From Macrostomum lignano (taxonomy: Eukaryota), in assembly GCA_002269645.1 (NCBI GenBank), contig NIVC01003669.1, positions 19,922 to 83,921 on the forward strand: DNA of 64,000 nt. Direction: 5' to 3'. The notes below the pieces were generated by a model. That model was not told where the DNA came from. It saw only the letters and a list, made by a program, of their open reading frames with translations, and did not search any database. How positions within the stretch are numbered: position 1 is the first letter of the stretch; each line of letters opens with the position of its first letter. The translations under genes were made by a program, and so were the position numbers. Positions 20,054 through 48,899 of the stretch are shown here, piece by piece.

Positions 20054-33352
<13,299 letters not shown>

Positions 33353-33459
33353 TTTTATGGCTATTCAAATAAACATTAAATCGCAGTTTTGAACGATCAA
33401 AAACTTGTGAAGCAGAAAATTTTTTATTGACAATTTTGTCCTTCGTTTCTAGGAATAAT

Positions 33460-34140
33460 CAGGGGTCTCGGTCACGAGTAATCTGGGGTCTGGGTCACGA
33501 GTAATCAGGAGTCTGGGTCACGAGTGATCAGGAGTCTGGGTCACGAGTGATCAGGAGTCTGGGTCACGAGTGATCAGAAATCTGGGTCACGAGTGATCAG
33601 GAGTCTGGGTCACGAGTGATCAGGAGTCTGGGTCACGAGTGATCAGGAGTCTGGGTCACGAGTGATCAGAAATCTGGGTCACGAGTGATCAGGAGTCTGG
33701 GTCACGAGTGATCAGGAGTCTGGGTCACGAGTGATCAGGAGTCTAGGTCACGAGTGATCAGGAGTCTGGGTCACGAGTGATCAAGAGTCTGGGTCACGAG
33801 TGATCAGGGGTCTGGGTCACAAGTGATCAGGAGTCTGGGTCACGAGTGATCAGGAGTCTAGGTCACGAGTGATCAGGGGTCTGGGTCACAAGTGATCAGG
33901 AGTCTGGGTCACGAGTGATCAGGGGTCTGGGTCACGAGTGATCAGGAGTCTGGGTCACGAGTGATCAGGAGTCTGGGTCACGAGTGATCAGGGGTCTGGG
34001 TCACAAGTGATCAGGAGTCTGGGTCACGAGTGATCAGGGGTCTGGGTCACGAGTGATCAGGAGTCTGGGTCACGAGTGATCAGGAGTCTAGGTCACGAGT
34101 GATCAGGGGTCTCGGTCACGAGTGATCAGAGGTCTGGTTC
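33460..34140. repeat. 23-bp minisatellite
   Basis: gggtcacgagtgatcaggagtct. Confidence 0.95.
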
Positions 34141-34411
34141 AAAGGGTCAGGGCTATCCAGGAGTAGATATAATTAGTTGAATATTTCAAATGAAAAAAAT
34201 CGAAATCAATTTAATATTTCTGTTATCAAATGCAAAAAATGCCGTCTCATAGCGTTTAGCTTTGAATATCAGCGTGTATATTTCAACATGATTATGATCA
34301 GTTTTGCATTTGCATACGTGCAATATATACACACACACTAATTCTCATTGACAGTACAAACCGTAAGCATAAAGTTTGATGGGAGATACAGCATAAAATA
34401 TATCCCTTGAA

Positions 34412-34810
34412 GAATCAGGGATGGGGTAGCAGCCAGATGGAGGATCAGGGATAGGGTAGCAGCCAGATGGAGGATCAGGGATGGGGTAGCAGCCAGATGG
34501 AGGATCAGGGATGGGGTAGCAGCCAGATGGAGGATCAGGGATAGGGTAGCAGCCAGATGGAGGATCAGGGATGGGGTAGCGGCCAGATGGAGGATCAGGG
34601 ATAGGGTAGCAGCCAGATGGAGGATCAGGGATGGGGTAGCGGCCAGATGGAGGATCAGGGATAGGGTAGCGGCCAGATGGAGGATCAGGGATAGGGTAGC
34701 AGCTAGATGGAGGATCAGGGATAGGGTAGCGGCCAGATGGAGGATCAGGGATAGGGTAGCGGCCAGATGGAGGATCAGGGATAGGGTAGCGGCCAGATGG
34801 AGGATGGGGT
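34412..34810. repeat. 30-bp minisatellite
   Basis: ggaggatcagggatagggtagc(a/g)gccagat. Confidence 0.95.
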
Positions 34811-34840
34811 GGGGTAACCACCAATCCCCTGAAGCAAGGC

Positions 34841-35440
34841 TCATCCCTTTAGCCCAGATTTGGGCCCTCCCGACGCCCCAGTCAACTTTTTCGCGGAGGC
34901 GGCCCGCTTGGCGGCGCGCGCCACATCGGCCTTGATGAAGTCCCGATCCTGACGCCAGGCGTCCAGAAACTCGCCGTCATCGTCCAGCTTGGGCCGGGCG
35001 GCGAAGAAGTCCAGGCCGAGCTGCACCCCGGCACGCAGAGGATGGAACTCGGCATTGGAGGCTGCCGGAGGTCGCTGCAGCTGACGCTGCCGACCGGTCG
35101 CCGCCGCTGTCCCGTCGTCGTCCTCCTCCTCTCCAAGCCGACCGCCAGTTTGGGGAAATTCAACATCGGCAGATTCGACAATTTCGGCGTCCAAATCCAG
35201 ATCGTCCTCGCCGAAGTCAAAGGCGAATGCGAACTTGGACCCGCCAGGTTCGTCGGGCCTGTTGATATCCAAGCCGGTTACTAGACCGTTGCTATGGACG
35301 CCAGACCCGTTGCTAGGGTTGTTGTTATTGCTGCTCTCACTACTATGCTTTTTGCTGTTAATTCGGCGCCGTTTTCGGCTGACATCATCAGCATCTGCCG
35401 CAGGCGCAGACGGCAGCTTGGACTTGTCTGTGGTGGCAGG
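34841..35440 (-). CDS. Methionine-less coding exon (199 aa + stop), acidic/basic, possibly nucleolar-type
   Basis: tgcag|CCT acceptor in phase 0; GC-rich open frame ending TGA; RKRRR basic patch, acidic tracts, C-terminal FF..W..R..K-A..K helix. A faint NOL8-like C-terminal resemblance is unverified. Confidence 0.65.
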   Translation of the reverse strand, partial: PATTDKSKLPSAPAADADDVSRKRRRINSKKHSSESSNNNNPSNGSGVHSNGLVTGLDINRPDEPGGSKFAFAFDFGEDDLDLDAEIVESADVEFPQTGGRLGEEEDDDGTAAATGRQRQLQRPPAASNAEFHPLRAGVQLGLDFFAARPKLDDDGEFLDAWRQDRDFIKADVARAAKRAASAKKLTGASGGPKSGLKG

Positions 35441-36052
35441 CTGCAATCCATTGAGTCAAAATTTCTCATTAATAATTGTTTTATTAAAGTATTAAAGTAA
35501 ATTAAAGTACACAGAACTACTATTCTATACAATATTATTACTAGTGTTCCATTGTAGCTACGGCTATGGGCTACGGCTACAGGATCTTACAGCAAATATG
35601 GTAAAAATAGGTGTCTACGGCAACTACAGATATGCCTATGGTAGATAGCTGCTCTTACAACTACGACTACAGAAATATGGTAGTTGTTGTCACATTCTGT
35701 AGTGTTGTGCCCAGGTGCACTTGCACCAATGAGCAATCTCTGGCTCTCAGTCAAGTGTGTCAGGCACTGCACTTCCACCCCTCCCGGCCGCATGCCTGCA
35801 CCAAACCACCCCCATTCTGTTTGTGTCAACCCCCCCATTCTGTCTGCGTCAACCCCCCTCCAGTTGCACCCACCCCACTGTCTGTTAGGCCAGCCGGCTT
35901 TGGCTGGCTGCAGCTCCAGTGTGCCCCCTCGCTCACCCTGTGATTGGCTGGTGGTCCAGCCAATTGGTTTGTATTCTTTCCCCCTTCCAATTGCGACCCT
36001 GACTTTGTAACTTTTATAAGACAATTATAATTTTGGCTAGCTGGGCCTGGTG

Positions 36053-36899
36053 TAGGCATTCCAATCCCGGGATCCCGGGATTTAGCCTCAAAACATGGGA
36101 TTTCAATCCTGGGATTTTTTGGGACTTGAAATTTAAGGATTTATGATCCTTGGGATTACAACAGTGCAGGATTGGGATCCTGGGATTGTTTCGGGATTCA
36201 AACTGATTTTAATTCTCTTTTTTTCAACTAATCGTGTAAAATTTGAAAAAAAGGTTCTACTTTAAAAATATGAAATAATACTACTGCAGCCTGCATGTCT
36301 GTATCAAAATCATACATAAAAAGCAGCAAAATTTGTTAGAGCAGTTTGTTAAGCAGAAATATAATTTTTTTTCGTTTTTGTAAGGTGTAATTTAATTTCA
36401 CATGTTCCTCAGTTGCCTGATGTCTAACACTGTAACGTGGCATTAAACATGACATTCACTTTGATAATTTACATTGATATTGCATAGCTAGCTATATAAC
36501 CTATATTAAAGCAAGTTATTATTGTTGTAATCAATTATTATCAATTATCTTTTATGGATAAATATTATTTATTATTATTAAACAATTTTCTATTTTTACT
36601 TGTACAATAACTAAGCAAAGAGAAGTTTATTGTATAAATATACCAGTTTGGACCATTAGCTATCATTATAAATATCATAATTATACTTTGTGGTTGTGGT
36701 GGAAGCTGGATACAGATGTTTCAATACATTTGATATTGGGATCCCAGTATCCTAGGATTTTTTTGAACTTTGAAGCGGGATCCCGGGATTACTTTCAGTC
36801 GGGATTTTCTGGGATTAGTGATCCCAGGATTTTAAACCATCAGGATTTCAAGATTTTTCAATCCTGGGATTGTAAATTGTCGGGATTTTGGAATCCCTA
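36053..36899. mobile_element. Non-autonomous hAT-type element (847 bp)
   Basis: Termini TAGG(C/G)ATTCCAA..TCCCG; 8-bp flanks GCCTGGTG / GCCTGGTT; subterminal GGGAT repeats. Confidence 0.8.
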
Positions 36900-37241
36900 G
36901 CCTGGTTTAGCAATACCCCAGGGCTCAACCAGCTAGCATAAATATAAATGTATGCAGGAGTGGTGGTAGGGGAGGCATCTTTTTGGTTGAATTGTGCAAG
37001 ACATAGCCATAAGTGATGCCATCTTTAGCTTATTCACTGTGATAATCAGAGTCACCATCAATAGTCATAATAATAATAATACACATCTCTTGGCTAAGAA
37101 ATTGCTTATTGCTCATTGCTAAAAGGATTAAATATAAAAACATGCCTTTTTATATATGTCAAACAGACATTTTGACTTGAAGTGAATTGTAAAAATGCTA
37201 GAGAAAAAACTGACTGACTGAATTCTAATAAAGATTATATC

Positions 37242-38876
37242 CAGTGCTAGGCAAGTTTATCAATTTTTTTAACTCGTTAAAAGTTAAAAAGTTAATTTAA
37301 TTGCTCCAAAATAATTAATTGTAACTAGTTAATTATTTAACTTTTGCCCAAACTTTAACTTCTAAAAAGTTAAAAGTTAAAGTTAATAATTCCCTAACAG
37401 AAAAAGTGACATTTTCATGGACATGTGTTCGGTGTGTTTTTTAAATTTCAGGTTGGTGCGGCGCGGCTGTGGCCAGGTCGCGGCGCACTGGGGAGCTTGT
37501 CAGGGAATACTCCCCTGGGAATTAGACCGGGGACCCTGGGGAGAAAAAAAGCATTTTTAACTAAATTTTTGCCATTTAAATAAGAAAATATTCACAGAAA
37601 GCTGATTGAAACTCTGTCTATGCTTTTTTACCATAAAACTGCTTATTTTAATGTATTATTTCAAACACAACACAAATTTGAATGGGGGGGTTCATAAGAC
37701 CCAAATTTCACAACGCCGAAACACCATACTTCACAAGACTGAAACTTCATAAGACCAAAATTTCACATTGTAGAAAACTTTACAATAAGGATTGTATTGC
37801 ATGCAGAATTTTTGGCGTTGTGAAATTTCGGTCTTATGAAATTAGCAACCCGTTTGAATGTTTTTTTTTTCACTATGAGTCTTTCAATCAAGCAAATTGA
37901 ATGTACGAGCATAGAAACCTGTCAGGAAAAAGAAGCCTTACTGACTATTGTGTTGGTCTACGTTGATGGCTTGACACATTTGACGCAGACACAGCGCCAT
38001 ATCCTGTGTCAGTCACTGACGCATAGGGGGGTGTCATACAATCACAAAATACTCCGTATTAGACAGACAAAATGGTGATTTACATGTATCTGCAAGAAAT
38101 TAAAATTCCAATTATAAAAACAGTCTCATTCATTAATTATCCTCCCATGAGTGCAGCTGCTGAGTATGCATTTTCTGCCTCTGGAGTCTGGACCCTTTCT
38201 GATAAAGGTGCGGACACGATTTGGTGATGCCATGTTGTCAAATACAGTTTTAAACAAACATTGCTTAAAGTTTTTACCCTTGCGCCTTGAATATGTAGTC
38301 CATCCAAAGCTTTAATCAAAGTTTAAAAAATGCCACTTAGTGACTTATAAAGATCTAAGTTATCGGCCGTTTTTTACTTATTTTTTTCCCCGGGGTTCCC
38401 AGGGAATGACAGTAAATTCCCCAGGTCCCCAATAAGAAAATTCCCTGGGGAATCGACATCCCTATGTACAACGATAACTTCTAGTAGTCCTTGGGTAGAA
38501 TATCAATAGATAATAGTTGAAGATTCCAGAATCTTCCGGAATATTCTATACATTATAACTTGTAACTGAAATATATACATGTAATAGTTTGTGATGCATT
38601 AAATAATGCTTAGAAAGGCAAAGTTATTTTATGTATGTATTAATTTTACTTTTTAATGGCATACAAGCTGTTGAAACCCGCGGATTTTGAACCCGGGGAA
38701 CTACATTTCCCGGAATTATTAACTTTTGTCATTTAACTTTAACTTACAGAAAAAATTTTATGATTTTTGTTAACTAGTTAATACATAAAAAATTTAACGA
38801 AAATTTAACGATTTTTTAAAAAATTTAACTAGTTAATTAACTAGTTAAACAATTAACTAGTTAATGCCCAGCACTG
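37242..38876. mobile_element. Non-autonomous hAT-type element (1635 bp) with nested inserts
   Basis: TIR CAGTGCT(A/G)GGCA; subterminal TTAACTAGTTAA repeats; TSD ATTATATC, right copy split by a later insertion. Confidence 0.8.
37691..37840. mobile_element. Small foldback/MITE nested in the hAT element
   Basis: ~31-bp inverted repeat TTCATAAGACC(C/G)AAATTTCACAACGCC. Confidence 0.6.
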
Positions 38877-38882
38877 ATTATA

Positions 38883-40571
38883 GGGTTATTCCATGATAGG
38901 GTCATCAAAGGTATAGAAATTTTTTTAAAAAATTATTTGCAAATGTGAATATTTCATTTTGCATATAATTATGTATAGTTTCATTTTTATGTAGTTTCAT
39001 ACACATTTATCTACCTCTAGGTATATATATTTTGTTTTGATCATGGTACCCTTACAAGATTTTAAATGTCCCGCGGGACATTATAAAAAGTTTAATCTAG
39101 TTTTCAATAAGAAAAAAAGTTAATCAACATAATGCATCAAGTGCATAAATAATAAAAATCTTTCTTTCTTATATCTAAAGACTGAAATTATAAAATTTTA
39201 TGATCTAATATAGTTCTATCTATCATAATTTTTTATTTCAAAAAGTTTGACTTCCCTTTTTTAAGTGTTAAAAACGACCATCATTTTTTTTTTACAAAAA
39301 GTTGTTGTACTAATTTTCAAGAGGTTTATAAGTTGATAATTTTTTGCTAAAATATTTTCTGAGCCTATATTTAAGTTTATAGTCATTTTTGTTAGTTTAT
39401 GATAAGTGTAACATGCTAAAAAAACCCTGCAAAGTTACCTAACGACCATCATTTTCTGGTATTCTGAAATTTGTTGATCTTCATAAAACCTGAATTACTA
39501 TCATTTATTCCTAAATTTTATACAAAAAACTGAATTTACTGATATTCTAAAATCATGTATTTTTTAATGTGAATTACTTATTCAATTTCTCTTTCAAAGT
39601 TTTTACAGTTTTGATTGTAAAGAAAAATATAGTGGAATTCAAGTCTTTTATTAAAAATGTATACTGTCAATTACTTGTTTGATACCTTAAAATCATTTTC
39701 AACCTGCACTATTAAAAAGGTTGTTCCAATTACTAACCATGCACCTAGAACTCTCCACTTTAGTTTGCAATGCACCTTAACACATGCCCCAATCTTCAGC
39801 ATAAGTAGTCTAACTAGACTCAAGTTTTTACTATCCATTGGTGCTACTGCTTATTGCCTAACAAATAATCTGTATTTGCCTTTGGTTTTGTTAATTGTTA
39901 TATTCTATTCTTTGAATTCTTGAATAGATTAGGACTGTCCATCTTTATGATCATATGTTGAGTTGTGCAATCATGAAGTGATGTTTTTGTTGAAGGTGCA
40001 TAAGTACATTTGATCTGAAATGTGAAACAGGTATAATAAATTTTATGGTTAGACAAGCAAGTTATAGTTTTTATATGAACAACTATGGATTATAAACAAT
40101 CTTTTAACCAAGATTGTATCTAAAAATAGAGAATCCTAATACACTTTTTAAAACTGAAGGTCGTTTTTTTGAAACAAACGACCGTCAGTCAACGACCGTC
40201 ATTTAAGAAAAAATGTGCAACACAGTTAAAGTTATCTACTAAAATGTAATAATTGTTTGTAACCATTCATCTAGCTATTGTTTACTACAATTAATGATCA
40301 ATTGAGACAAAAACTTGCCTGATTCGCAGGAATCTTAAACTTAAGTTATAAAGTTAGATACATAAACTTTCACCAAAAACAACCGTCATCAAAAGTTTCT
40401 CTCTGCTAAATCAACACAGTAAGACAAATGACTTTAAAATGTATCTCATCTTAATCTAGAGGTCACGCCCATAAATATAGAACTCACAAAGTCTCAATTT
40501 AGTTTGTCTTTTGTATGATTACTGATTAATATTTTCTCCAACCCAACGACCGTCATCTCGTGGAATTACCC
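38883..40571. mobile_element. Non-autonomous TIR DNA transposon with 4-bp TATA TSD (Sola-like)
   Basis: TIR GGGT(T/A)ATTCCA(T/C)GA; TATA on both flanks; internal AACGACC(A/G)TCAT repeats; superfamily is inference. Confidence 0.7.
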
Positions 40572-40633
40572 TATATCACAACAGGCTTTTAATATATAAG
40601 CCAAGCCTTATTGGCTAAATTGAGGGTCTAATC

Positions 40634-41184
40634 AATTTCATGAAAGGCAGTGCTTATCCCTATGGTACCGTAGGAATAATTTCTATCTTATTCCAACAGT
40701 ACTGTGAGAATAATTTTCTGCTTATCTGCATGGCACACTGACGAGATAGCTGTCCCATCTTCTACATATGCGGATATGCTGTGGGAATAATTTAGTTTAG
40801 TACTTACGGTTTGAGTGCAGTATAACAACATAACTTTGTTTGACAATTTGTTTAATAGAAATAAAGATTTAATGGCCTTTTATGCAAAAAATGCTAGTCG
40901 TGGTGTTGATCTAGATCAATAGCTTCTTAGTATCCTCAATTCAAATTCCCTTTCAAAAAGCTATAAACTATTCACATTAATAGCATATATATGTAGAAAA
41001 TATGGCAGTTATCTCGTCAGTGTGCCATGCGGATAAGCAGAAAATTATTCCCATGGCATATGTAGAAGATAGGGTAGCTATCTTGTCAGTGTGCCATGCA
41101 GATATGCAGAAAATTATTCCCACAGTACTGTTGGAATAAGACAAATACTGTGCTATGTGGATAAGCATTGCCTTCATGAAAATT
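40634..41184. mobile_element. Foldback element with ~130-140-bp imperfect inverted arms
   Basis: aatttcatgaa..cttatcc..ttattccaacagtactgtg..gcatggcacactgac..ttctacatatgc is mirrored at ~41057-41184, with an extra partial arm at ~40985-41055. Confidence 0.65.
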
Positions 41185-42584
41185 GGTTGAGCTATTTTTC
41201 TGGAGTCAATTACATATATACTTAACCAAATTAGATAGATACAACTCATTCTTAGCATATAGGATAGGCCCTACAATACAATTATGCCCATATCAACAAA
41301 ATAATAAATAATTTGTAGGCATAACTGTGCTATTTCTTTTCATTTGTTTCTATTTTCATTTTCATTTTCATTTCTTTGTTGATTTATAAATTTTTGTAAA
41401 ACTTTAGCCACCATATATTTTTTAAATGTAAGCCATAGGGTGTACTGAAAAAAGGTTTGAGAAAATTATTTAAGCCAATTAAGTCAAAGGCAACAGTTGA
41501 GTTGATTTTTCATAGCAATGATAATGCTGAAGATGCAACATTTACTAAAGCAATTTATAAGCTAATAAATGTAATTGTAAAATGGAAAGCTTCAGATTTC
41601 CTGGGTTTACTTCTAAACGTCAGTTCGAAAAAATGTAACCAACAAGTCCCAGTCACTATACACCCAAGTGCTATAGGCTCGTTGATTCCTGTAAACTACT
41701 TGACAAGGTGTATTTTTAAAATAATGCACGTGCACTGTGATTAAAACAAATTTAGTTTAGTTTAATTTTATTAAAATTTAGAAAGGAAAAATAAAGATAG
41801 CAGTCAATTAGTTACTATTGTTACTAGAAAAATACATATTTATAAAAAAATTTCTGTTAGTGCAGGACAAAATATTTTTTAAGAATAATACCTTCAAAGA
41901 GCTCTTGAGAGCAATTCTACATTTAGCTATGCATGCATCAAAGATATTTTCCATGCATCAAGTAACATATACATAAAATAAAATGTAGCTCGTATATGCG
42001 AATGAAGTCGTCCTTTGTGTTACAGTGAATTAATTGGCTTTAATCTGATCAATGATCATATATTATACTTCAAATGGTTCCACCATAAATAAAATTCTCG
42101 ACGTGCCCATGGGGTCGCTTTCGCATACTATAGAAATTTCACATTGTCGAAGACAGCAAATTCATAAGCTTGAGCTTCAAAAGCCTGAAATTTCGAAATT
42201 TCCAATCGTCATATATAGTTGTTTATTGTTAAAGTTGTGAGCTAGCGAAAGTGACTAGGCTATAGCAAATGTTCGACAATGTTAATTTTTTTATTTGACT
42301 TCCTATACGATGAGACATTTCAAAATTTCCAGAATAGATACAGTTGAGGAGCTCAACTGCAGATCATTCAATGAATGGAATTGAAGTTGCATGTGGTACG
42401 TGTACAATTATGTACGTACAAATGTACACATACATATGTAGAACGCCGTTTAGTCAAGACTGAGCGAGGGCACTGCATGTCCACGACAATATCATTTATT
42501 CAGTATCATTTATTTATTCAACAATTACTTGACTGTGAGAGCATAGCCAGTGTGTAAATATAGTTCACATACAATTGCTATATT

Positions 42585-43421
42585 AGGTCGTATGAATAAA
42601 ATGAGCAATACCTTGCGAGTTCAAGCTTAAACGCTGAGACTGAGCTACTGCTCAGGTCTGAGATTTTGCTCCGAGTCGGAGCATCTGCTCAAGGTCAGTA
42701 TGAATAAAGTTGGGACTCCTAGTCAGAGTTCAGACTTTTGGTCTCAGAGCTGTAACTCCAATATTGCGATACTTTAAACCATAGACAAATGTTGTTTTCT
42801 AAGAGTATGCTACGAGTATATGCTTTGTGTTTTATGCAGAATCCTTCTTTCTGTTTTCCCCTTGTGGCTTCTTTATAATCGGTTAAGTCTGTGCATCAAA
42901 TCACGAATGAAGCCGGCATCAGCGCACCGCCTCTTGTCTCTGTGCTGCCGTTCAGAAAGCGCGTGGCCAGATACTGCACGTTGGTGCGAGAAAATCGGTA
43001 GAGTCGACCATACTCCGTGTCTCTAGTCAAGTCGGAAGATCGGCGCTCCGGATAAAACTTCCGTCGAGCGGGAGCACGTGCAGCAAAGAACTCAGCCATA
43101 CTGCCAAAGAACTCAGTCAAAGAACATCAGCAACTAGAAAGCGTTAGTTACAGCAACCAGTAGAGTATAGATGGCTGAGGCAGGCAGAGGGCTGCCTCAA
43201 CATTTTGTGAGTTGCAGCTCAGAAAAGATTGTCTATGGCCCGAGTTTATTCATACAGACCGGAGAGTTTGCTCAGCCCCGGATTTTTTCGCTGACACTCG
43301 GAGCAACAACTTTCAAGTCAAAACTCATGAGCTGTTGCTCGGAAGTCACTGCTCCGTTTTTTCATACTGACTTGAGATTTTGTGCGAGTCTGAGCAATTG
43401 CTCATTTTATTCATACGGCCT
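42585..43421 (-). mobile_element. Internally deleted PIF/Harbinger-type element (837 bp) with a transposase N-terminal remnant
   Basis: 25-bp TIR AGG(T/C)CGTATGAATAAAATGAGCAAT; 3-bp ATT flanks; ORF 42896-43120 with EYGRLYRFSRTNVQYLA..ETRGGAL resembles Harbinger DDE_Tnp_4 N-termini (from memory). Confidence 0.72.
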
Positions 43422-43772
43422 ATTGGAATCGAGGAGGAGGGCTCGAGCTAATTTATTTGAAATTAAATTGAAAATCAAGTTGTTCGTCATGATTCGTCAA
43501 ATTTCTTATAATGTAATTCATCTACAGGTTATACTTTAGTTCATTCAGCCGCTTTTTCATCTATTAGGCGTAGGGAAAGATATAAATACTACTGTAGAGC
43601 CGCCCGTACAGCAATCCGACTTCGGGTAAACGTCGACGGACGTCGGAATGTTGCTCAGGCTTAATTGGACGCAGATGCAAAGTTATACGCGCGTAAATAA
43701 TTAAAAACGGCTGCAAACATGTACATTTGCATGTTAATTTTCTCAAAACGCCATATGGATTAAGTCCAAGTC

Positions 43773-44202
43773 CTAGGGTGCCGCTTTCGACTGCTTTATC
43801 TCCAATGCCCGGGAATTCGGCGGGGTTTTGGCCACATCGTAGGCGCTCAGCCGGCTTATAATTGTCTCGAGCTCTGCTTTGGTGACGCCCGGCTTTCCCT
43901 GACTGCCACCGTTCGAGCCCCGATAGAAATCGTAGCGATTCTGTCCCAGCTCGTGTCGACCGACCCGCGACTCCACGGGCCAGCGGCTGAAGTCGCACTG
44001 CTGCAGCCGGTTGAAAATCTCTCGAGCCTCGGCTTCGCTCACTGTCCGGTGGCTGTGCTTTGGCTGCTGCTGGTTGTCATTTCGACGAACGTCCTGGCGT
44101 AGGCGCTGAACTATGGCGTCAACATCGGCTGCTGAACGCTTTTGCTGCTGCTGCTGCTGCTGGTCCTGAGATGATGACTCATCTTCTACATGATAGTCGT
44201 AC
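43773..44202 (-). CDS. Exon 2 of an uncharacterised ~170-aa protein
   Basis: ttcacag|G TAC GAC..; open frame with polyQ, in frame with track ORF 43773..44042; TAG stop. Confidence 0.75.
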
Positions 44203-44329: not shown

Positions 44330-45450
44330 AGGCGCTCTAAGCACAACACTGACCCAACTATCTAACGCTCTAAGCACAACACTGACCCAACTATCTAACG
44401 CTCTAAGCACAACACTGACCCAACTATCTAACGCTCTAAGCACAACACTGACCCAACTATCTAACGCTCTAAGCACAACACTGACCCAACTATCTAACAC
44501 TCTAAGCACAACACTGACCCAACTATCTAACGCTCTAAGCACAACACTGACCCAACTATCTAACGCTCTAAGCACAACACTGACCCAACTATCTAACGCT
44601 CTAAGCACAACACTGACCCAACTATCTAACGCTCTAAGCACAACACTGACCCAACTATCTAACGCTCTAAGCACAACACTGACCCAACTATCTAACACTC
44701 TAAGCACAACACTGACCCAACTATCTAACGCTCTAAGCACAACACTGACCCAACTATCTAACGCTCTAAGCACAACACTGACCCAACTATCTAACGCTCT
44801 AAGCACAACACTGACCCAACTATCTAACACTCTAAGCACAACACTGACCCAACTATCTAACGCTCTAAGCACAACACTGACCCAACTATCTAACGCTCTA
44901 AGCACAACACTGACCCAACTATCTAACGCTCTAAGCACAACACTGACCCAACTATCTAACGCTCTAAGCACAACACTGACCCAACTATCTAACGCTCTAA
45001 GCACAACACTGACCCAACTATCTAACGCTCTAAGCACAACACTGACCCAACTATCTAACGCTCTAAGCACAATACTGACCCAACTATCTAACGCTCTAAG
45101 CACAATACTGACCCAACAACTATCTATCTAACGCTCTAAGCACAATACTGACCCAACTATCTAACGCTCCAAGCAGAATACTGACCCAACTATCTAACGC
45201 TCCAAGCACAACACTGACCCAACTATCTAACGCTCTAAGCACAACACTGACCCAACAACAATCTATCGAACGCTCTAAGCACAACACTGACCCAACTATC
45301 TAACGCTCTAAGCACAACACTGACCCAACTATCTAACGCTCTAAGCACAACACTGACCCAACTATCTAACGCTCTAAGCACAACACTGACCCAACTATCT
45401 AACGCTCTAAGCACAACACTGACCCAACTATCTAACGCTCCAAGCACAAT
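44330..45450. repeat. 33-bp highly homogeneous minisatellite in the intron of the 170-aa gene
   Basis: tctaacgctctaagcacaacactgacccaacta. Confidence 0.95.
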
Positions 45451-45652
45451 ACTGAGACAACAATCTACTTAATAAGTTGATTTGCTGTTCTACATAATCC
45501 TAACCAAACTACGAGTATTTAACGCTCCCAAACTCAACTCGGGCCCAACCCAAGCTATGACCCTATCGGAACTCCATCCTTAACCCAGCAATCTGCAAAG
45601 CCGATGCTGCACCACCTGCACCCTAGATGATAGCGCCACTGCCAAATCGCAC

Positions 45653-47834: not shown

Positions 47835-48785
47835 TCACACTCTGCAGGTGTCCTCTCTGACCAGCTGTCGCGACTCGCTCGCACCTCGCGATCTGGCCTC
47901 CAGGCCGATGCCGCTGCTGGCCTCATCTCGCTGGCCGCACCCGAAGCAGCAGGAGAACAGCTCGGCCGCCTCCCTGCGGAACAGCGGATTCCCGACGCAG
48001 TAGAGCAGAAAGTTGCAGCAGTGATTGGCGAACTGCAGCATCAGCAAGGCTGTCCAGACCACCCTGTATGAGTAGTAGTCGCTCTCTGACAGACTGTCCG
48101 ACTGGGGATGCGGGCCGCCCAGGCAGGTAAGGTAGAGCTTCACTGGCGATGTCAAAGCAACGAATGCGAAGCTGGTGAGCAGCAGCATGACGGTGGTTCG
48201 GTAGTTGGCCAGCTTGGACTGGCCGGAGCCGAGCATTGAGTCCCGGCGTACGGCCCTCAGCTTAACCAAAATGCACGCATTGCAGCCCAGAATGATTAGG
48301 AACGGTCCAAAAGCGGTGAGCGCCAGGTCTATCTGAGGGAACACTCGCTCGACAAAGTACTGATAGTCCTCGGAGTTCTCGCAAGATCTGCGCCAGCCCA
48401 GTGGTGCGGTGGAGTTCACGACTAGATTCCGGGTGACCAGAAAGTGCAAATTGCAGCCTACAAGGCAGACGAATCCTGTGGACATGATGATTGCCAGTCC
48501 GCGTCTAGACACTAGGAACGCTCGCGCCCAGTTGCCAGGGGAGATGCACACAGCGGCGAATCGCTCCACGGCTACTAGAGCTACCAACCAGGAGGCCACC
48601 ATCAGGCTGAGGTAGAGTGACAGTTCGTGCAGCTTGCAGCACAAGCCGCAGGTCACCTGAGGATCCAATGCGTTGCCGAAGCGACTTTTAAAGTAGGCCG
48701 CCTTGCGCAGCCAATGACGCAACGGTCCGGTAAGAAGGGCCAGAGAGTCTACGATTGCCAGGACCGAAAGTGGAAGATGCACCAC
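47835..48785 (-). CDS. Rhodopsin-class (FMRFamide-receptor-like) GPCR, exon 2 (TM2-TM7)
   Basis: LAIVDSL (TM2), C in ECL1/TM3, AVERF (TM3), PF.IILGCN (TM5), FVALTSP (TM6), NHCCNFLLY (TM7), FRRE helix 8. Confidence 0.88.
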   Translation of the reverse strand: MVHLPLSVLAIVDSLALLTGPLRHWLRKAAYFKSRFGNALDPQVTCGLCCKLHELSLYLSLMVASWLVALVAVERFAAVCISPGNWARAFLVSRRGLAIIMSTGFVCLVGCNLHFLVTRNLVVNSTAPLGWRRSCENSEDYQYFVERVFPQIDLALTAFGPFLIILGCNACILVKLRAVRRDSMLGSGQSKLANYRTTVMLLLTSFAFVALTSPVKLYLTCLGGPHPQSDSLSESDYYSYRVVWTALLMLQFANHCCNFLLYCVGNPLFRREAAELFSCCFGCGQRDEASSGIGLEARSRGASESRQLVREDTCRV

Positions 48786-48899
48786 CTTGTTTGTTTGGGA
48801 GTGTGGGCGTTTTTGCATTCATTTGAGCTTCACCATTGTATGATGAGCTTCACACAACAATAAAAACAGCAGAAATTGTCAGGGAAGACAGTAAAGATA

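What the first reader, a model, noticed from the sequence alone, without database searches (positions are those of the whole stretch)
34841..35446. Methionine-less 199-aa exon that a flatworm spliced leader AUG would complete in frame
Seen: a GC-rich, protein-like frame begins exactly at a phase-0 acceptor (tgcag|CCT GCC ACC ACA) and contains no ATG at all. The next ~8 kb upstream is AT-rich transposon DNA in which I found no convincing coding exon, and the next gene ends in its own stop at 43773. Known: flatworm SL exons end in AUG, and that AUG can serve as initiator. Inference: trans-splicing at 35440 would yield M-PATTDKSKL..., a single-exon gene that depends on the SL for its start codon and lies 1.5 kb upstream of DEPDC5. 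The alternative is an orphan terminal exon of a larger (weakly NOL8-like) gene.
Basis: partly seen in the sequence, partly recalled or inferred. Interest (0 to 1): 0.7.

Follow-up and report, generated by a model that had tools for sequence, protein, structure and literature searches.

The report
Start codon fossilised from spliced leader

Summary
The window is Macrostomum lignano (Mlig_3_7 contig NIVC01003669.1). A 199-codon frame on the minus strand (35440 to 34841) has no in-frame ATG, starts right after ttGCAG, and lies 1.5 kb upstream of DEPDC5. No coding signal was found in the AT-rich 8 kb upstream.

Three other near-identical copies of the locus read ttCATG|CCT at that position. They therefore encode M-PATTDKSKL… from a genomic ATG.

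The 17 nt ending at that ATG/AG match the 3' tail of the M. lignano spliced leader (GACTCAATTTATTGCATG). The edit distance is 3, which is the single best of 128,002 end positions in the window, and the match ends exactly at the ORF start.

Best reading: an intronless, lineage-restricted gene whose start codon is a DNA fossil of an SL AUG, from a retroposed or cDNA-converted trans-spliced mRNA. The window copy has lost that ATG.

Whether trans-splicing at the new TTGCAG now restores the AUG is untested. The public gene models for all four copies start 12 nt further down at a second AG, where the SL AUG would be out of frame.

No homologues were found, and the NOL8 idea is not supported.

The parts
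34841..35440 (-). 199-codon ORF plus TGA stop, with no in-frame ATG. It encodes PATTDKSKL…SGLKG: a low-complexity acidic and basic protein with an NLS-like RKRRRINSKK and two predicted C-terminal helices.
   Evidence: identical protein from D5 onward in L001-L003
35441..35444 (-). The other three copies read CATG here, so their ATG corresponds to 35443-35441.
   Evidence: four-copy alignment; per-segment differences; 200-aa ORF from the ATG in L001
35441..35457 (-). GACTCAATGGATTGCAG, a likely relic of the 3' tail of the spliced leader (GACTCAATTTATTGCATG). The sister copies read GACTCAATGGATTCATG.
   Evidence: 16-mer with 2 mismatches; end-anchored edit distance 3, unique best of 128,002 positions and ending at 35441; one occurrence per locus
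35456..35458 (-). In-frame TGA, 15 nt upstream of the ATG/AG position and inside the SL-like stretch. It closes the frame on the 5' side.
   Evidence: read directly; the ORF list starts at TTG 35446
35449..35451 (-). Upstream ATG in frame +1 (CTCAATGG), present in all copies. It opens a 56-aa overlapping ORF in unspliced transcripts.
35428..35429 (-). Second AG (ccaccacAG|ACAAG). The first base of the public gene model is 35428. This is inferred to be the trans-splice site used by the annotation pipeline.
   Evidence: CDS begins GAC AAG in all four copies; method in PMC5730564; inference
35281..35427 (-). Frame +1 stretch. It would be read from the SL AUG if the SL is joined at 35427, giving 49 aa (MTSPSCRLRL…IATV) and then TAG.
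34414..34805 (.). 30-nt tandem array, 13 copies, starting 36 nt after the stop codon (presumed 3' UTR).
33458..34141 (.). 23-nt tandem array, about 30 copies, between this gene and DEPDC5.
33350..33428 (-). AATAAA (33428-33423), then 62 nt on an AG (33362-33361), then the DEPDC5 ATG (33352-33350). The spacing resembles an operon junction.
   Evidence: inference

Best explanation
The ORF is one of four near-identical copies of a small intronless gene found only in Macrostomum lignano so far (the BOX15_Mlig021781g1 family). The copies are homeologues or alleles of the neopolyploid genome. The gene sits just upstream of DEPDC5 and encodes a 200-aa, mostly disordered, probably nuclear protein.

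Shown: The window copy carries a private CAT>GCA change. That change deletes the ATG and, as a side effect, creates TTGCAG.

Inferred: the ATG and the 14 nt before it are a decayed, 5'-truncated DNA copy of the spliced-leader tail. The gene, or at least its 5' end, would then derive from a reverse-transcribed SL-trans-spliced mRNA. This could be a retrogene, or a cDNA conversion of the original locus that also removed any introns. In that ancestral mRNA the SL AUG was the initiator, since the ORF has no other AUG. Retroposition fixed it in DNA.

The window copy is therefore a start-codon-loss variant of a gene with a fossil SL start. It is not evidence that the gene needs the SL today.
For: - Window identity: the window is 100% identical to NIVC01003669.1, and three further contigs carry the same gene.
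- Start codon: the alignment shows CATG in L001, L003 and L004 against GCAG in the window at 35444-35441. The next 600 nt differ at 1, 1 and 3 sites from L001, L003 and L004 respectively. L001 gives a 200-aa ORF starting MPATT….
- SL sequence comes from PMC8629364.
- SL tail match: GACTCAAT--ATTGCA-G. The 16-mer with at most 2 mismatches occurs once in the window. The 18-nt tail has edit distance 3 at one position out of 128,002, and that position ends at the ORF's first codon. Distance 4 occurs at 11 positions. This gives a position-specific P of about 1e-5 to 1e-4.
- The motif is not part of a dispersed repeat.
- The gene is intronless, with a single contiguous 588-nt CDS in the annotation.
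- Against L004 the ORF is less diverged (4 differences in 600 nt) than the flanks: 6 substitutions plus 2 indels in 330 nt upstream, and 15 plus 2 in 303 nt downstream.
- A genome-encoded SL at the 5' end of another M. lignano protein gene (Mlig013257.g1) is reported in PMC8629364.
- DNA-encoded relict SLs mark retrogenes in dinoflagellates (PMC6050394, PMC5585692, PMC12014239).
Against: - Only the 3' 18 nt of the SL are significantly similar. With 24, 28 or 35 nt the match is no better than background. The tail length was chosen after seeing the match.
- No poly(A) remnant or target-site duplication was seen downstream.
- No intron-bearing parent or any paralogue elsewhere was found.
- The ORF has no homologues at all and its first third has no codon-usage signal, so its coding status rests on modest evidence.
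- The public gene models start downstream of the ATG in all copies. This suggests that present mRNAs may not include the ATG.
- The GCAG/CATG difference could be an assembly error, although the window copy's other private indels fall only outside the ORF.
Confidence: 0.55

Rival explanations
1. The pre-mRNA is SL-trans-spliced at 35441|35440, and the SL AUG starts translation of M-PATTDKSKL…. The CAT>GCA allele then makes the same protein as its sisters, with the start codon donated in trans.
For: TTGCAG fits the M. lignano trans-splice acceptor motif [T/C]TNCAG. The junction is in frame and yields exactly the 200-aa protein of the sister copies. SL AUG initiation is documented in flatworms (Cheng et al. 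2006, cited in PMC9851317). The ORF of this copy is still intact.
Against: There is no transcript evidence. The public model for this very contig starts at 35428, not 35440. The tract before the AG is purine- and AT-rich rather than pyrimidine-rich. The site does not exist in three of the four copies.
Confidence: 0.15
2. In all four copies the mRNA is trans-spliced at the second AG (35428|35427). The genomic ATG is removed with the outron and the SL AUG lands in frame +1. The first product is then a 49-aa peptide, and the 195-aa 'partial' protein is not made by normal scanning. This is compatible with the fossil-SL history.
For: All four public CDS models begin at the G of ccaccacAG (GAC AAG…) and are flagged partial. 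The annotation pipeline cuts transcripts at mapped SL sites (PMC5730564). The SL's last G always matches the G of an acceptor AG, which would explain a start at 35428 (inference).
Against: Codon usage and the G1/A2 periodicity favour frame 0, not +1, over the 3' two thirds. CCACAG departs from the acceptor motif at its second position. The model start could have another cause.
Confidence: 0.3
3. An ordinary small gene with an ordinary ATG. The likeness to the SL tail is chance, and the window copy is a null allele, a young pseudogene or an assembly error.
For: The SL 5' half does not match. No poly(A), target-site duplication or parent gene was found. Local alignments of the SL scoring 20-24 occur elsewhere in the window.
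Against: The end-anchored match is the best in the window and falls on the one pre-specified base. The ORF has no other ATG, as expected for a frame that relied on the SL AUG.
Confidence: 0.3
4. The stretch is the 3'-terminal exon of a larger multi-exon, NOL8-like gene whose upstream exons supply the ATG.
For: An AG precedes the frame in this copy, and a second AG lies 12 nt inside it in all copies.
Against: No Pfam domain (RRM or any other) was found in the three minus-strand frames of the 8.3 kb upstream. Three copies have ATG instead of AG at the frame start. There is no match to NOL8 or any family in Pfam, PDB, or the 5.8-billion and 1.8-billion protein sets. The sequence 0.4-1 kb upstream is not even conserved between copies.
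Confidence: 0.03
5. Not protein-coding at all. The open frame is a by-product of GC-rich sequence in a non-coding transcript upstream of DEPDC5.
For: An open frame of this length arises in 6% of shuffles. There are no homologues. The first third has no codon signal. AF2 pLDDT is 53.
Against: Frame 0 is the best of six frames, and its 3' two thirds score close to real exons. Divergence is lower than in both flanks. No indels occur in 600 nt across four copies, although indels are frequent just upstream.
Confidence: 0.15

Closest known systems
Flatworm SL 3'-terminal AUG used as initiator methionine (Cheng et al. 2006, J Biol Chem 281:733; 'slORFs', PMC9851317)
   Same: The SL ends in AUG, the recipient frame has no AUG of its own, and the junction is in frame, so the SL would supply Met1.
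   Different: Here the same Met is DNA-encoded in three of four copies. Use of the SL AUG at this site today is unproven, and the annotated 5' end lies at another AG.
Retrogenes tagged by DNA-encoded relict spliced leaders in dinoflagellates (PMC6050394, PMC5585692, PMC12014239)
   Same: An SL remnant lies in genomic DNA directly 5' of an intronless coding region, at the former SL-exon junction. Such genes can be trans-spliced again.
   Different: This is a metazoan (flatworm) case. Only the last 18 nt survive. The relic carries the start codon itself. No poly(A) remnant or parent gene was found. It is a single locus, not a genome-wide pattern.
Genome-encoded SL at the 5' end of M. lignano gene Mlig013257.g1 (noted in PMC8629364)
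   Same: Same species, with the SL sequence present in DNA at the 5' end of a protein-coding gene.
   Different: That case was reported only as a mis-assigned SL RNA. I could not inspect it, and no link to a start codon was made.

Membership tests
SL-AUG-initiated ORF (slORF) | The organism's SL ends in AUG | tested here: met
   The M. lignano SL ends …TTGCATG (PMC8629364).
SL-AUG-initiated ORF (slORF) | An AG acceptor lies directly before the ORF, with the junction in frame | tested here: inconclusive
   Met in the window copy (TTGCAG|CCT). Not met in L001, L003 and L004, which read TTCATG|CCT.
SL-AUG-initiated ORF (slORF) | The recipient ORF lacks its own initiator AUG | tested here: inconclusive
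   The window copy has 0 in-frame ATG. The sister copies have a genomic ATG at codon 1.
SL-AUG-initiated ORF (slORF) | SL-containing transcripts are joined at that site and translated from the SL AUG | not testable with these tools
   No reads are available. The public model starts at 35428, not 35440.
Relict-SL retrogene | A DNA-encoded SL remnant abuts the coding region at the former junction | tested here: met
   15 of 18 bases with one gap. This is the unique best of 128,002 positions and ends at the ORF start. The 5' 17 nt of the SL are not recognisable.
Relict-SL retrogene | Intronless coding region | tested here: met
   A single 600-nt ORF, and the annotated CDS is contiguous.
Relict-SL retrogene | Poly(A) remnant and/or target-site duplication | tested here: not met
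   No A-tract lies 3' of the gene. Tandem arrays fill the 1.5 kb down to DEPDC5.
Relict-SL retrogene | An intron-bearing parent gene exists elsewhere | tested here: not met
   Only the four syntenic copies were found in 5.8 billion and 1.8 billion protein sets. The genome DNA itself could not be searched.
NOL8 (nucleolar protein 8) | N-terminal RRM and recognisable sequence similarity | tested here: not met
   Pfam finds 0 families at E up to 10. No RRM was found upstream. No NOL8 hit appears in any search.
PKD-domain repeat proteins (top non-self hits) | The PKD beta-sandwich profile matches at domain level | tested here: not met
   The hits reach E of 1e-18 only by summing 10-12 weak matches of one acidic segment to tandem repeats. 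Identity is 26-29%. No Pfam PKD hit was found. The segment is predicted disordered.
SL-resolved operon with DEPDC5 | Same strand, repeat-adjusted spacing under 1 kb, downstream gene trans-spliced | tested here: inconclusive
   Same strand. The 1488 nt from stop to ATG include 1076 nt of tandem repeats, leaving about 412 nt. The threshold is from PMC8629364. Trans-splicing of DEPDC5 is not testable here.

The most novel reading that the evidence does not exclude
A start codon that moves between DNA and the spliced leader. An SL AUG was fixed in DNA by retroposition of a trans-spliced mRNA. In one copy, a small change in the fossil tail (…ATTGCATG-like to …ATTGCAG) turned the fossil back into a trans-splice acceptor at the original junction. 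The SL would then again donate the AUG, and both kinds of allele would make the same protein. Because the flatworm SL ends in GCATG, any relic SL is one deletion away from GCAG, which would make such reversions easy.
Probability: 0.12. Interest if true: 0.7.

Novelty: new variant of a known kind. Interest (0 to 1): 0.45.

Why it matters
If the SL-tail relic is real, it is direct genomic evidence for two things in a flatworm. First, a gene once relied on the spliced leader's AUG as its only start codon. Second, trans-spliced mRNAs are reverse-transcribed back into the genome, as is known on a large scale in dinoflagellates. Relict SLs could then serve as a marker for retrogenes in flatworms. 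They would also show how SL-dependent and SL-independent starts interconvert.

For annotation, there is a practical lesson. 'Partial' methionine-less models in this polyploid assembly should be checked against their sister copies and against the SL sequence before unusual initiation is proposed.

Tried and rejected
- Homology. Pfam gave 0 families at E up to 10. The 5.8-billion protein search returned only the gene itself. Exhaustive HMMER against 1.8 billion representatives returned only three prokaryote-type PKD-repeat proteins. Their E-values come from 10-12 summed weak matches to one acidic segment, so I rejected them as spurious. The PDB sequence search gave only E=0.13 to a designed ankyrin repeat (GxDxNxxDxxGxxxF motif), which is not significant. 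The AF2 single-sequence model had pLDDT 53, too poor for a fold search, so none was run.
- The full-length SL. Alignment of the 24, 28 and 35 nt versions was not better than background. The local-alignment score of the SL is not exceptional in the window. Only the end-anchored tail test is.
- Poly(A) or target-site duplication. I read the 1.5 kb downstream and found none.
- Upstream exons. Three minus-strand frames of 35441-43800 against Pfam gave nothing.
- Published gene tables. 'Mlig021781' was not found in full texts or in the held supplements of PMC5730564 and PMC5816591.
- The bacterial promoter and terminator scan is irrelevant to a eukaryote and was ignored.
- The dN/dS approach. Only 4 variable sites occur in the ORF (2 synonymous, 2 non-synonymous), so it has no power.

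Full report
**Source and observation**

The window is Macrostomum lignano. A 20.6-kb locus from assembly GCA_002269645.1, contig NIVC01003669.1, is 100% identical to window 24841-45428.

On the minus strand the frame CCT GCC ACC ACA GAC… runs from 35440 to a TGA at 34843-34841. It has 199 sense codons and no in-frame ATG. It is preceded by tggattGCAG, and an in-frame TGA lies at 35458-35456.

- The 36-43 kb stretch is 27-39% GC.
- None of its three minus-strand frames hits Pfam.
- The upstream annotated gene ends at 43773.
- A gene with IML1_N, vWA_IML1 and DEPDC5_CTD domains starts at 33352.

The statistical oddity is modest. In dinucleotide shuffles, 6.2% give an equally long open frame and 4.0% give no in-frame ATG.

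The frame does have coding-like periodicity, with G at 0.44 in position 1 and A at 0.33 in position 2. With a codon table trained on 1468 codons of neighbouring exons it is the best of six frames. It scores +0.15 bit/codon in the 3' two thirds, against 0.18-0.37 for real exons. The first 66 codons show no frame preference.

**The decisive comparison**

The protein is in the public collection as a 195-aa 'partial' hypothetical protein. One example is PAA56748.1, BOX15_Mlig021781g1. It is encoded on four contigs of the same assembly, which fits the duplicated genome of this neopolyploid.

At 35444-35441 the window reads GCAG, while L001, L003 and L004 read CATG. Those three copies therefore have no AG there. 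Instead they carry a DNA-encoded ATG directly in front of CCT GCC ACC, which gives a 200-aa ORF MPATTDKSKL….

The ORF that follows differs from the window at only 1 site (L001, L003) or 3 sites (L004) and has no indels. The 330 nt upstream carry 2-8 substitutions and 3-6 indel events between the window and the other copies. The window copy's other private changes are slippage-type deletions outside the ORF. This argues that they are real rather than assembly noise, but I could not check reads.

**The SL fossil**

The M. lignano SL is CGGTCTCTTACTGCGAAGACTCAATTTATTGCATG, and the enriched trans-splice acceptor motif is [T/C]TNCAG (PMC8629364).

The 17 nt ending at the ATG/AG position read GACTCAATGGATTGCAG in the window and GACTCAATGGATTCATG in the others. 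The SL tail reads GACTCAATTTATTGCATG.

- A 16-mer search with at most 2 mismatches finds this site only.
- The end-anchored edit distance of the 18-nt tail is 3 at exactly one of 128,002 end positions in the window. That position is 35441, the base before the ORF's first codon.
- Distance 4 occurs at 11 positions.

The position-specific probability is therefore about 1e-5. Allowing for my post-hoc choice of tail length, it is perhaps 1e-4.

The 5' 17 nt of the SL are not recognisable. The motif occurs once per locus and is not part of a repeat.

**What this most likely means**

I infer that the start codon of this gene is a DNA copy of an SL AUG. A trans-spliced mRNA (SL|CCUGCC…) had the SL AUG as its only start codon, since the ORF has no other ATG. 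That mRNA was reverse-transcribed and fixed in the genome, either as a 5'-truncated retrocopy or by cDNA conversion of the original locus. The gene's intronless state fits this.

Two precedents exist:
- The same paper notes a genome-encoded SL at the 5' end of another M. lignano protein gene.
- DNA-encoded relict SLs are the accepted marker of retrogenes in dinoflagellates.

Several things count against it:
- No poly(A) remnant or target-site duplication was seen.
- No parent gene or paralogue was found.
- Only half of the SL is preserved.

**Present-day expression is unresolved**

All four public CDS models begin at 35428 with GAC AAG, that is, at the G of a second AG (ccaccacAG|ACAAG). This is so even in the copies that have the ATG 12 nt upstream.

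The annotation pipeline cuts transcripts at mapped SL sites (PMC5730564). The final G of the SL always coincides with the G of an acceptor AG. I therefore infer that the annotators saw trans-splicing at 35428|35427.

An SL joined there puts its AUG in frame +1 and gives a 49-aa peptide. Frame 0 stays open through the SL without any AUG. This conflicts with the codon evidence for frame 0 and cannot be settled without reads.

In that mechanism, trans-splicing at the newly created TTGCAG restores M-PATT….

**What the protein is**

No family could be assigned:
- Pfam gave nothing.
- The exhaustive search returned only PKD-repeat proteins. Their scores are sums of many weak matches to one acidic segment.
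- PDB gave nothing significant.
- A single-sequence AF2 model is mostly disordered, with two C-terminal helices at 134-147 and 157-186.

With an RKRRRINSKK motif and acidic tracts it looks like a small nuclear protein, but that is a guess. The NOL8 suggestion is not supported.

**Verdict**

The in-frame SL junction is real for this copy, but the gene does not need it in the other three copies. The 'acceptor' is a mutated start codon.
- The more interesting result is the probable fossil SL AUG. That would be a flatworm variant of the relict-SL retrogenes known from dinoflagellates, combined with the known use of the flatworm SL AUG as initiator.
- The evidence is a single 18-nt match plus context, so I rate confidence at about 0.55 and interest as moderate.

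Noticed in passing
window 33350-34841: The 1.5 kb between this gene's stop and the DEPDC5 ATG is mostly two tandem arrays: 30 nt x 13 at 34414-34805 and 23 nt x 30 at 33458-34141. The repeat-adjusted spacing is about 412 nt. An AATAAA (33428-33423) sits 62 nt before an AG (33362-33361) that precedes the DEPDC5 ATG. This is the layout expected for an SL-resolved operon by the criteria of PMC8629364.
   Followed up: partly
window 44333-45467: A 33-nt tandem array of 34 copies lies inside the span of the upstream annotated gene (170-179 aa product). One frame reads (LRALDSWVSVV)n. Copy number differs between the four loci.
   Followed up: no
window 47835-48818 (-): An intact 327-aa ORF hits Pfam 7tm_1 (rhodopsin-family GPCR; E=9e-10, above the gathering score). 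It looks like a single-exon GPCR gene.
   Followed up: partly
window 22433-23344 (+): An intact 303-aa ankyrin-repeat ORF (Ank_2, E=9e-18) lies on the strand opposite to DEPDC5 and within its span, so it may be a nested gene in an intron.
   Followed up: partly
window 20600-24800: Long arrays of a GTCTGTCTGTCT-type microsatellite, translated as (CLSV)n or (DRQT)n, lie in the 3' part of the DEPDC5 span and create many spurious ORFs of 150-360 aa.
   Followed up: no
window 37229-41028; L001 and L003 upstream of the gene: Structure differs between copies. The window has about 3.8 kb of AT-rich DNA that is absent from L001. L001 and L003 instead carry a long (GGGGGGTTGACGCAGACAGAAT)n array 0.4-1 kb upstream of the gene, where the window has only 2.3 copies (35804-35858).
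   Followed up: partly
window 24785-35860 vs L001-L004: The window copy is a mosaic. Upstream of the ORF it is closest to L004. In the ORF and 3' repeats it is closest to L001 and L003 (1 ORF difference, none in the 3' repeats). Over DEPDC5 it is 99.7% identical to L003. A recombination or gene-conversion breakpoint therefore lies close to the mutated ATG.
   Followed up: partly
L001 3280-3310; L004 31-60: The upstream neighbour gene starts …gagCTCAATTTgaatttcctttag|CCGCC ATG. It has a clean acceptor 5 nt before its ATG and an 8-mer shared with the SL (CTCAATTT) 13 nt upstream of the acceptor AG. The shared 8-mer is probably chance.
   Followed up: no
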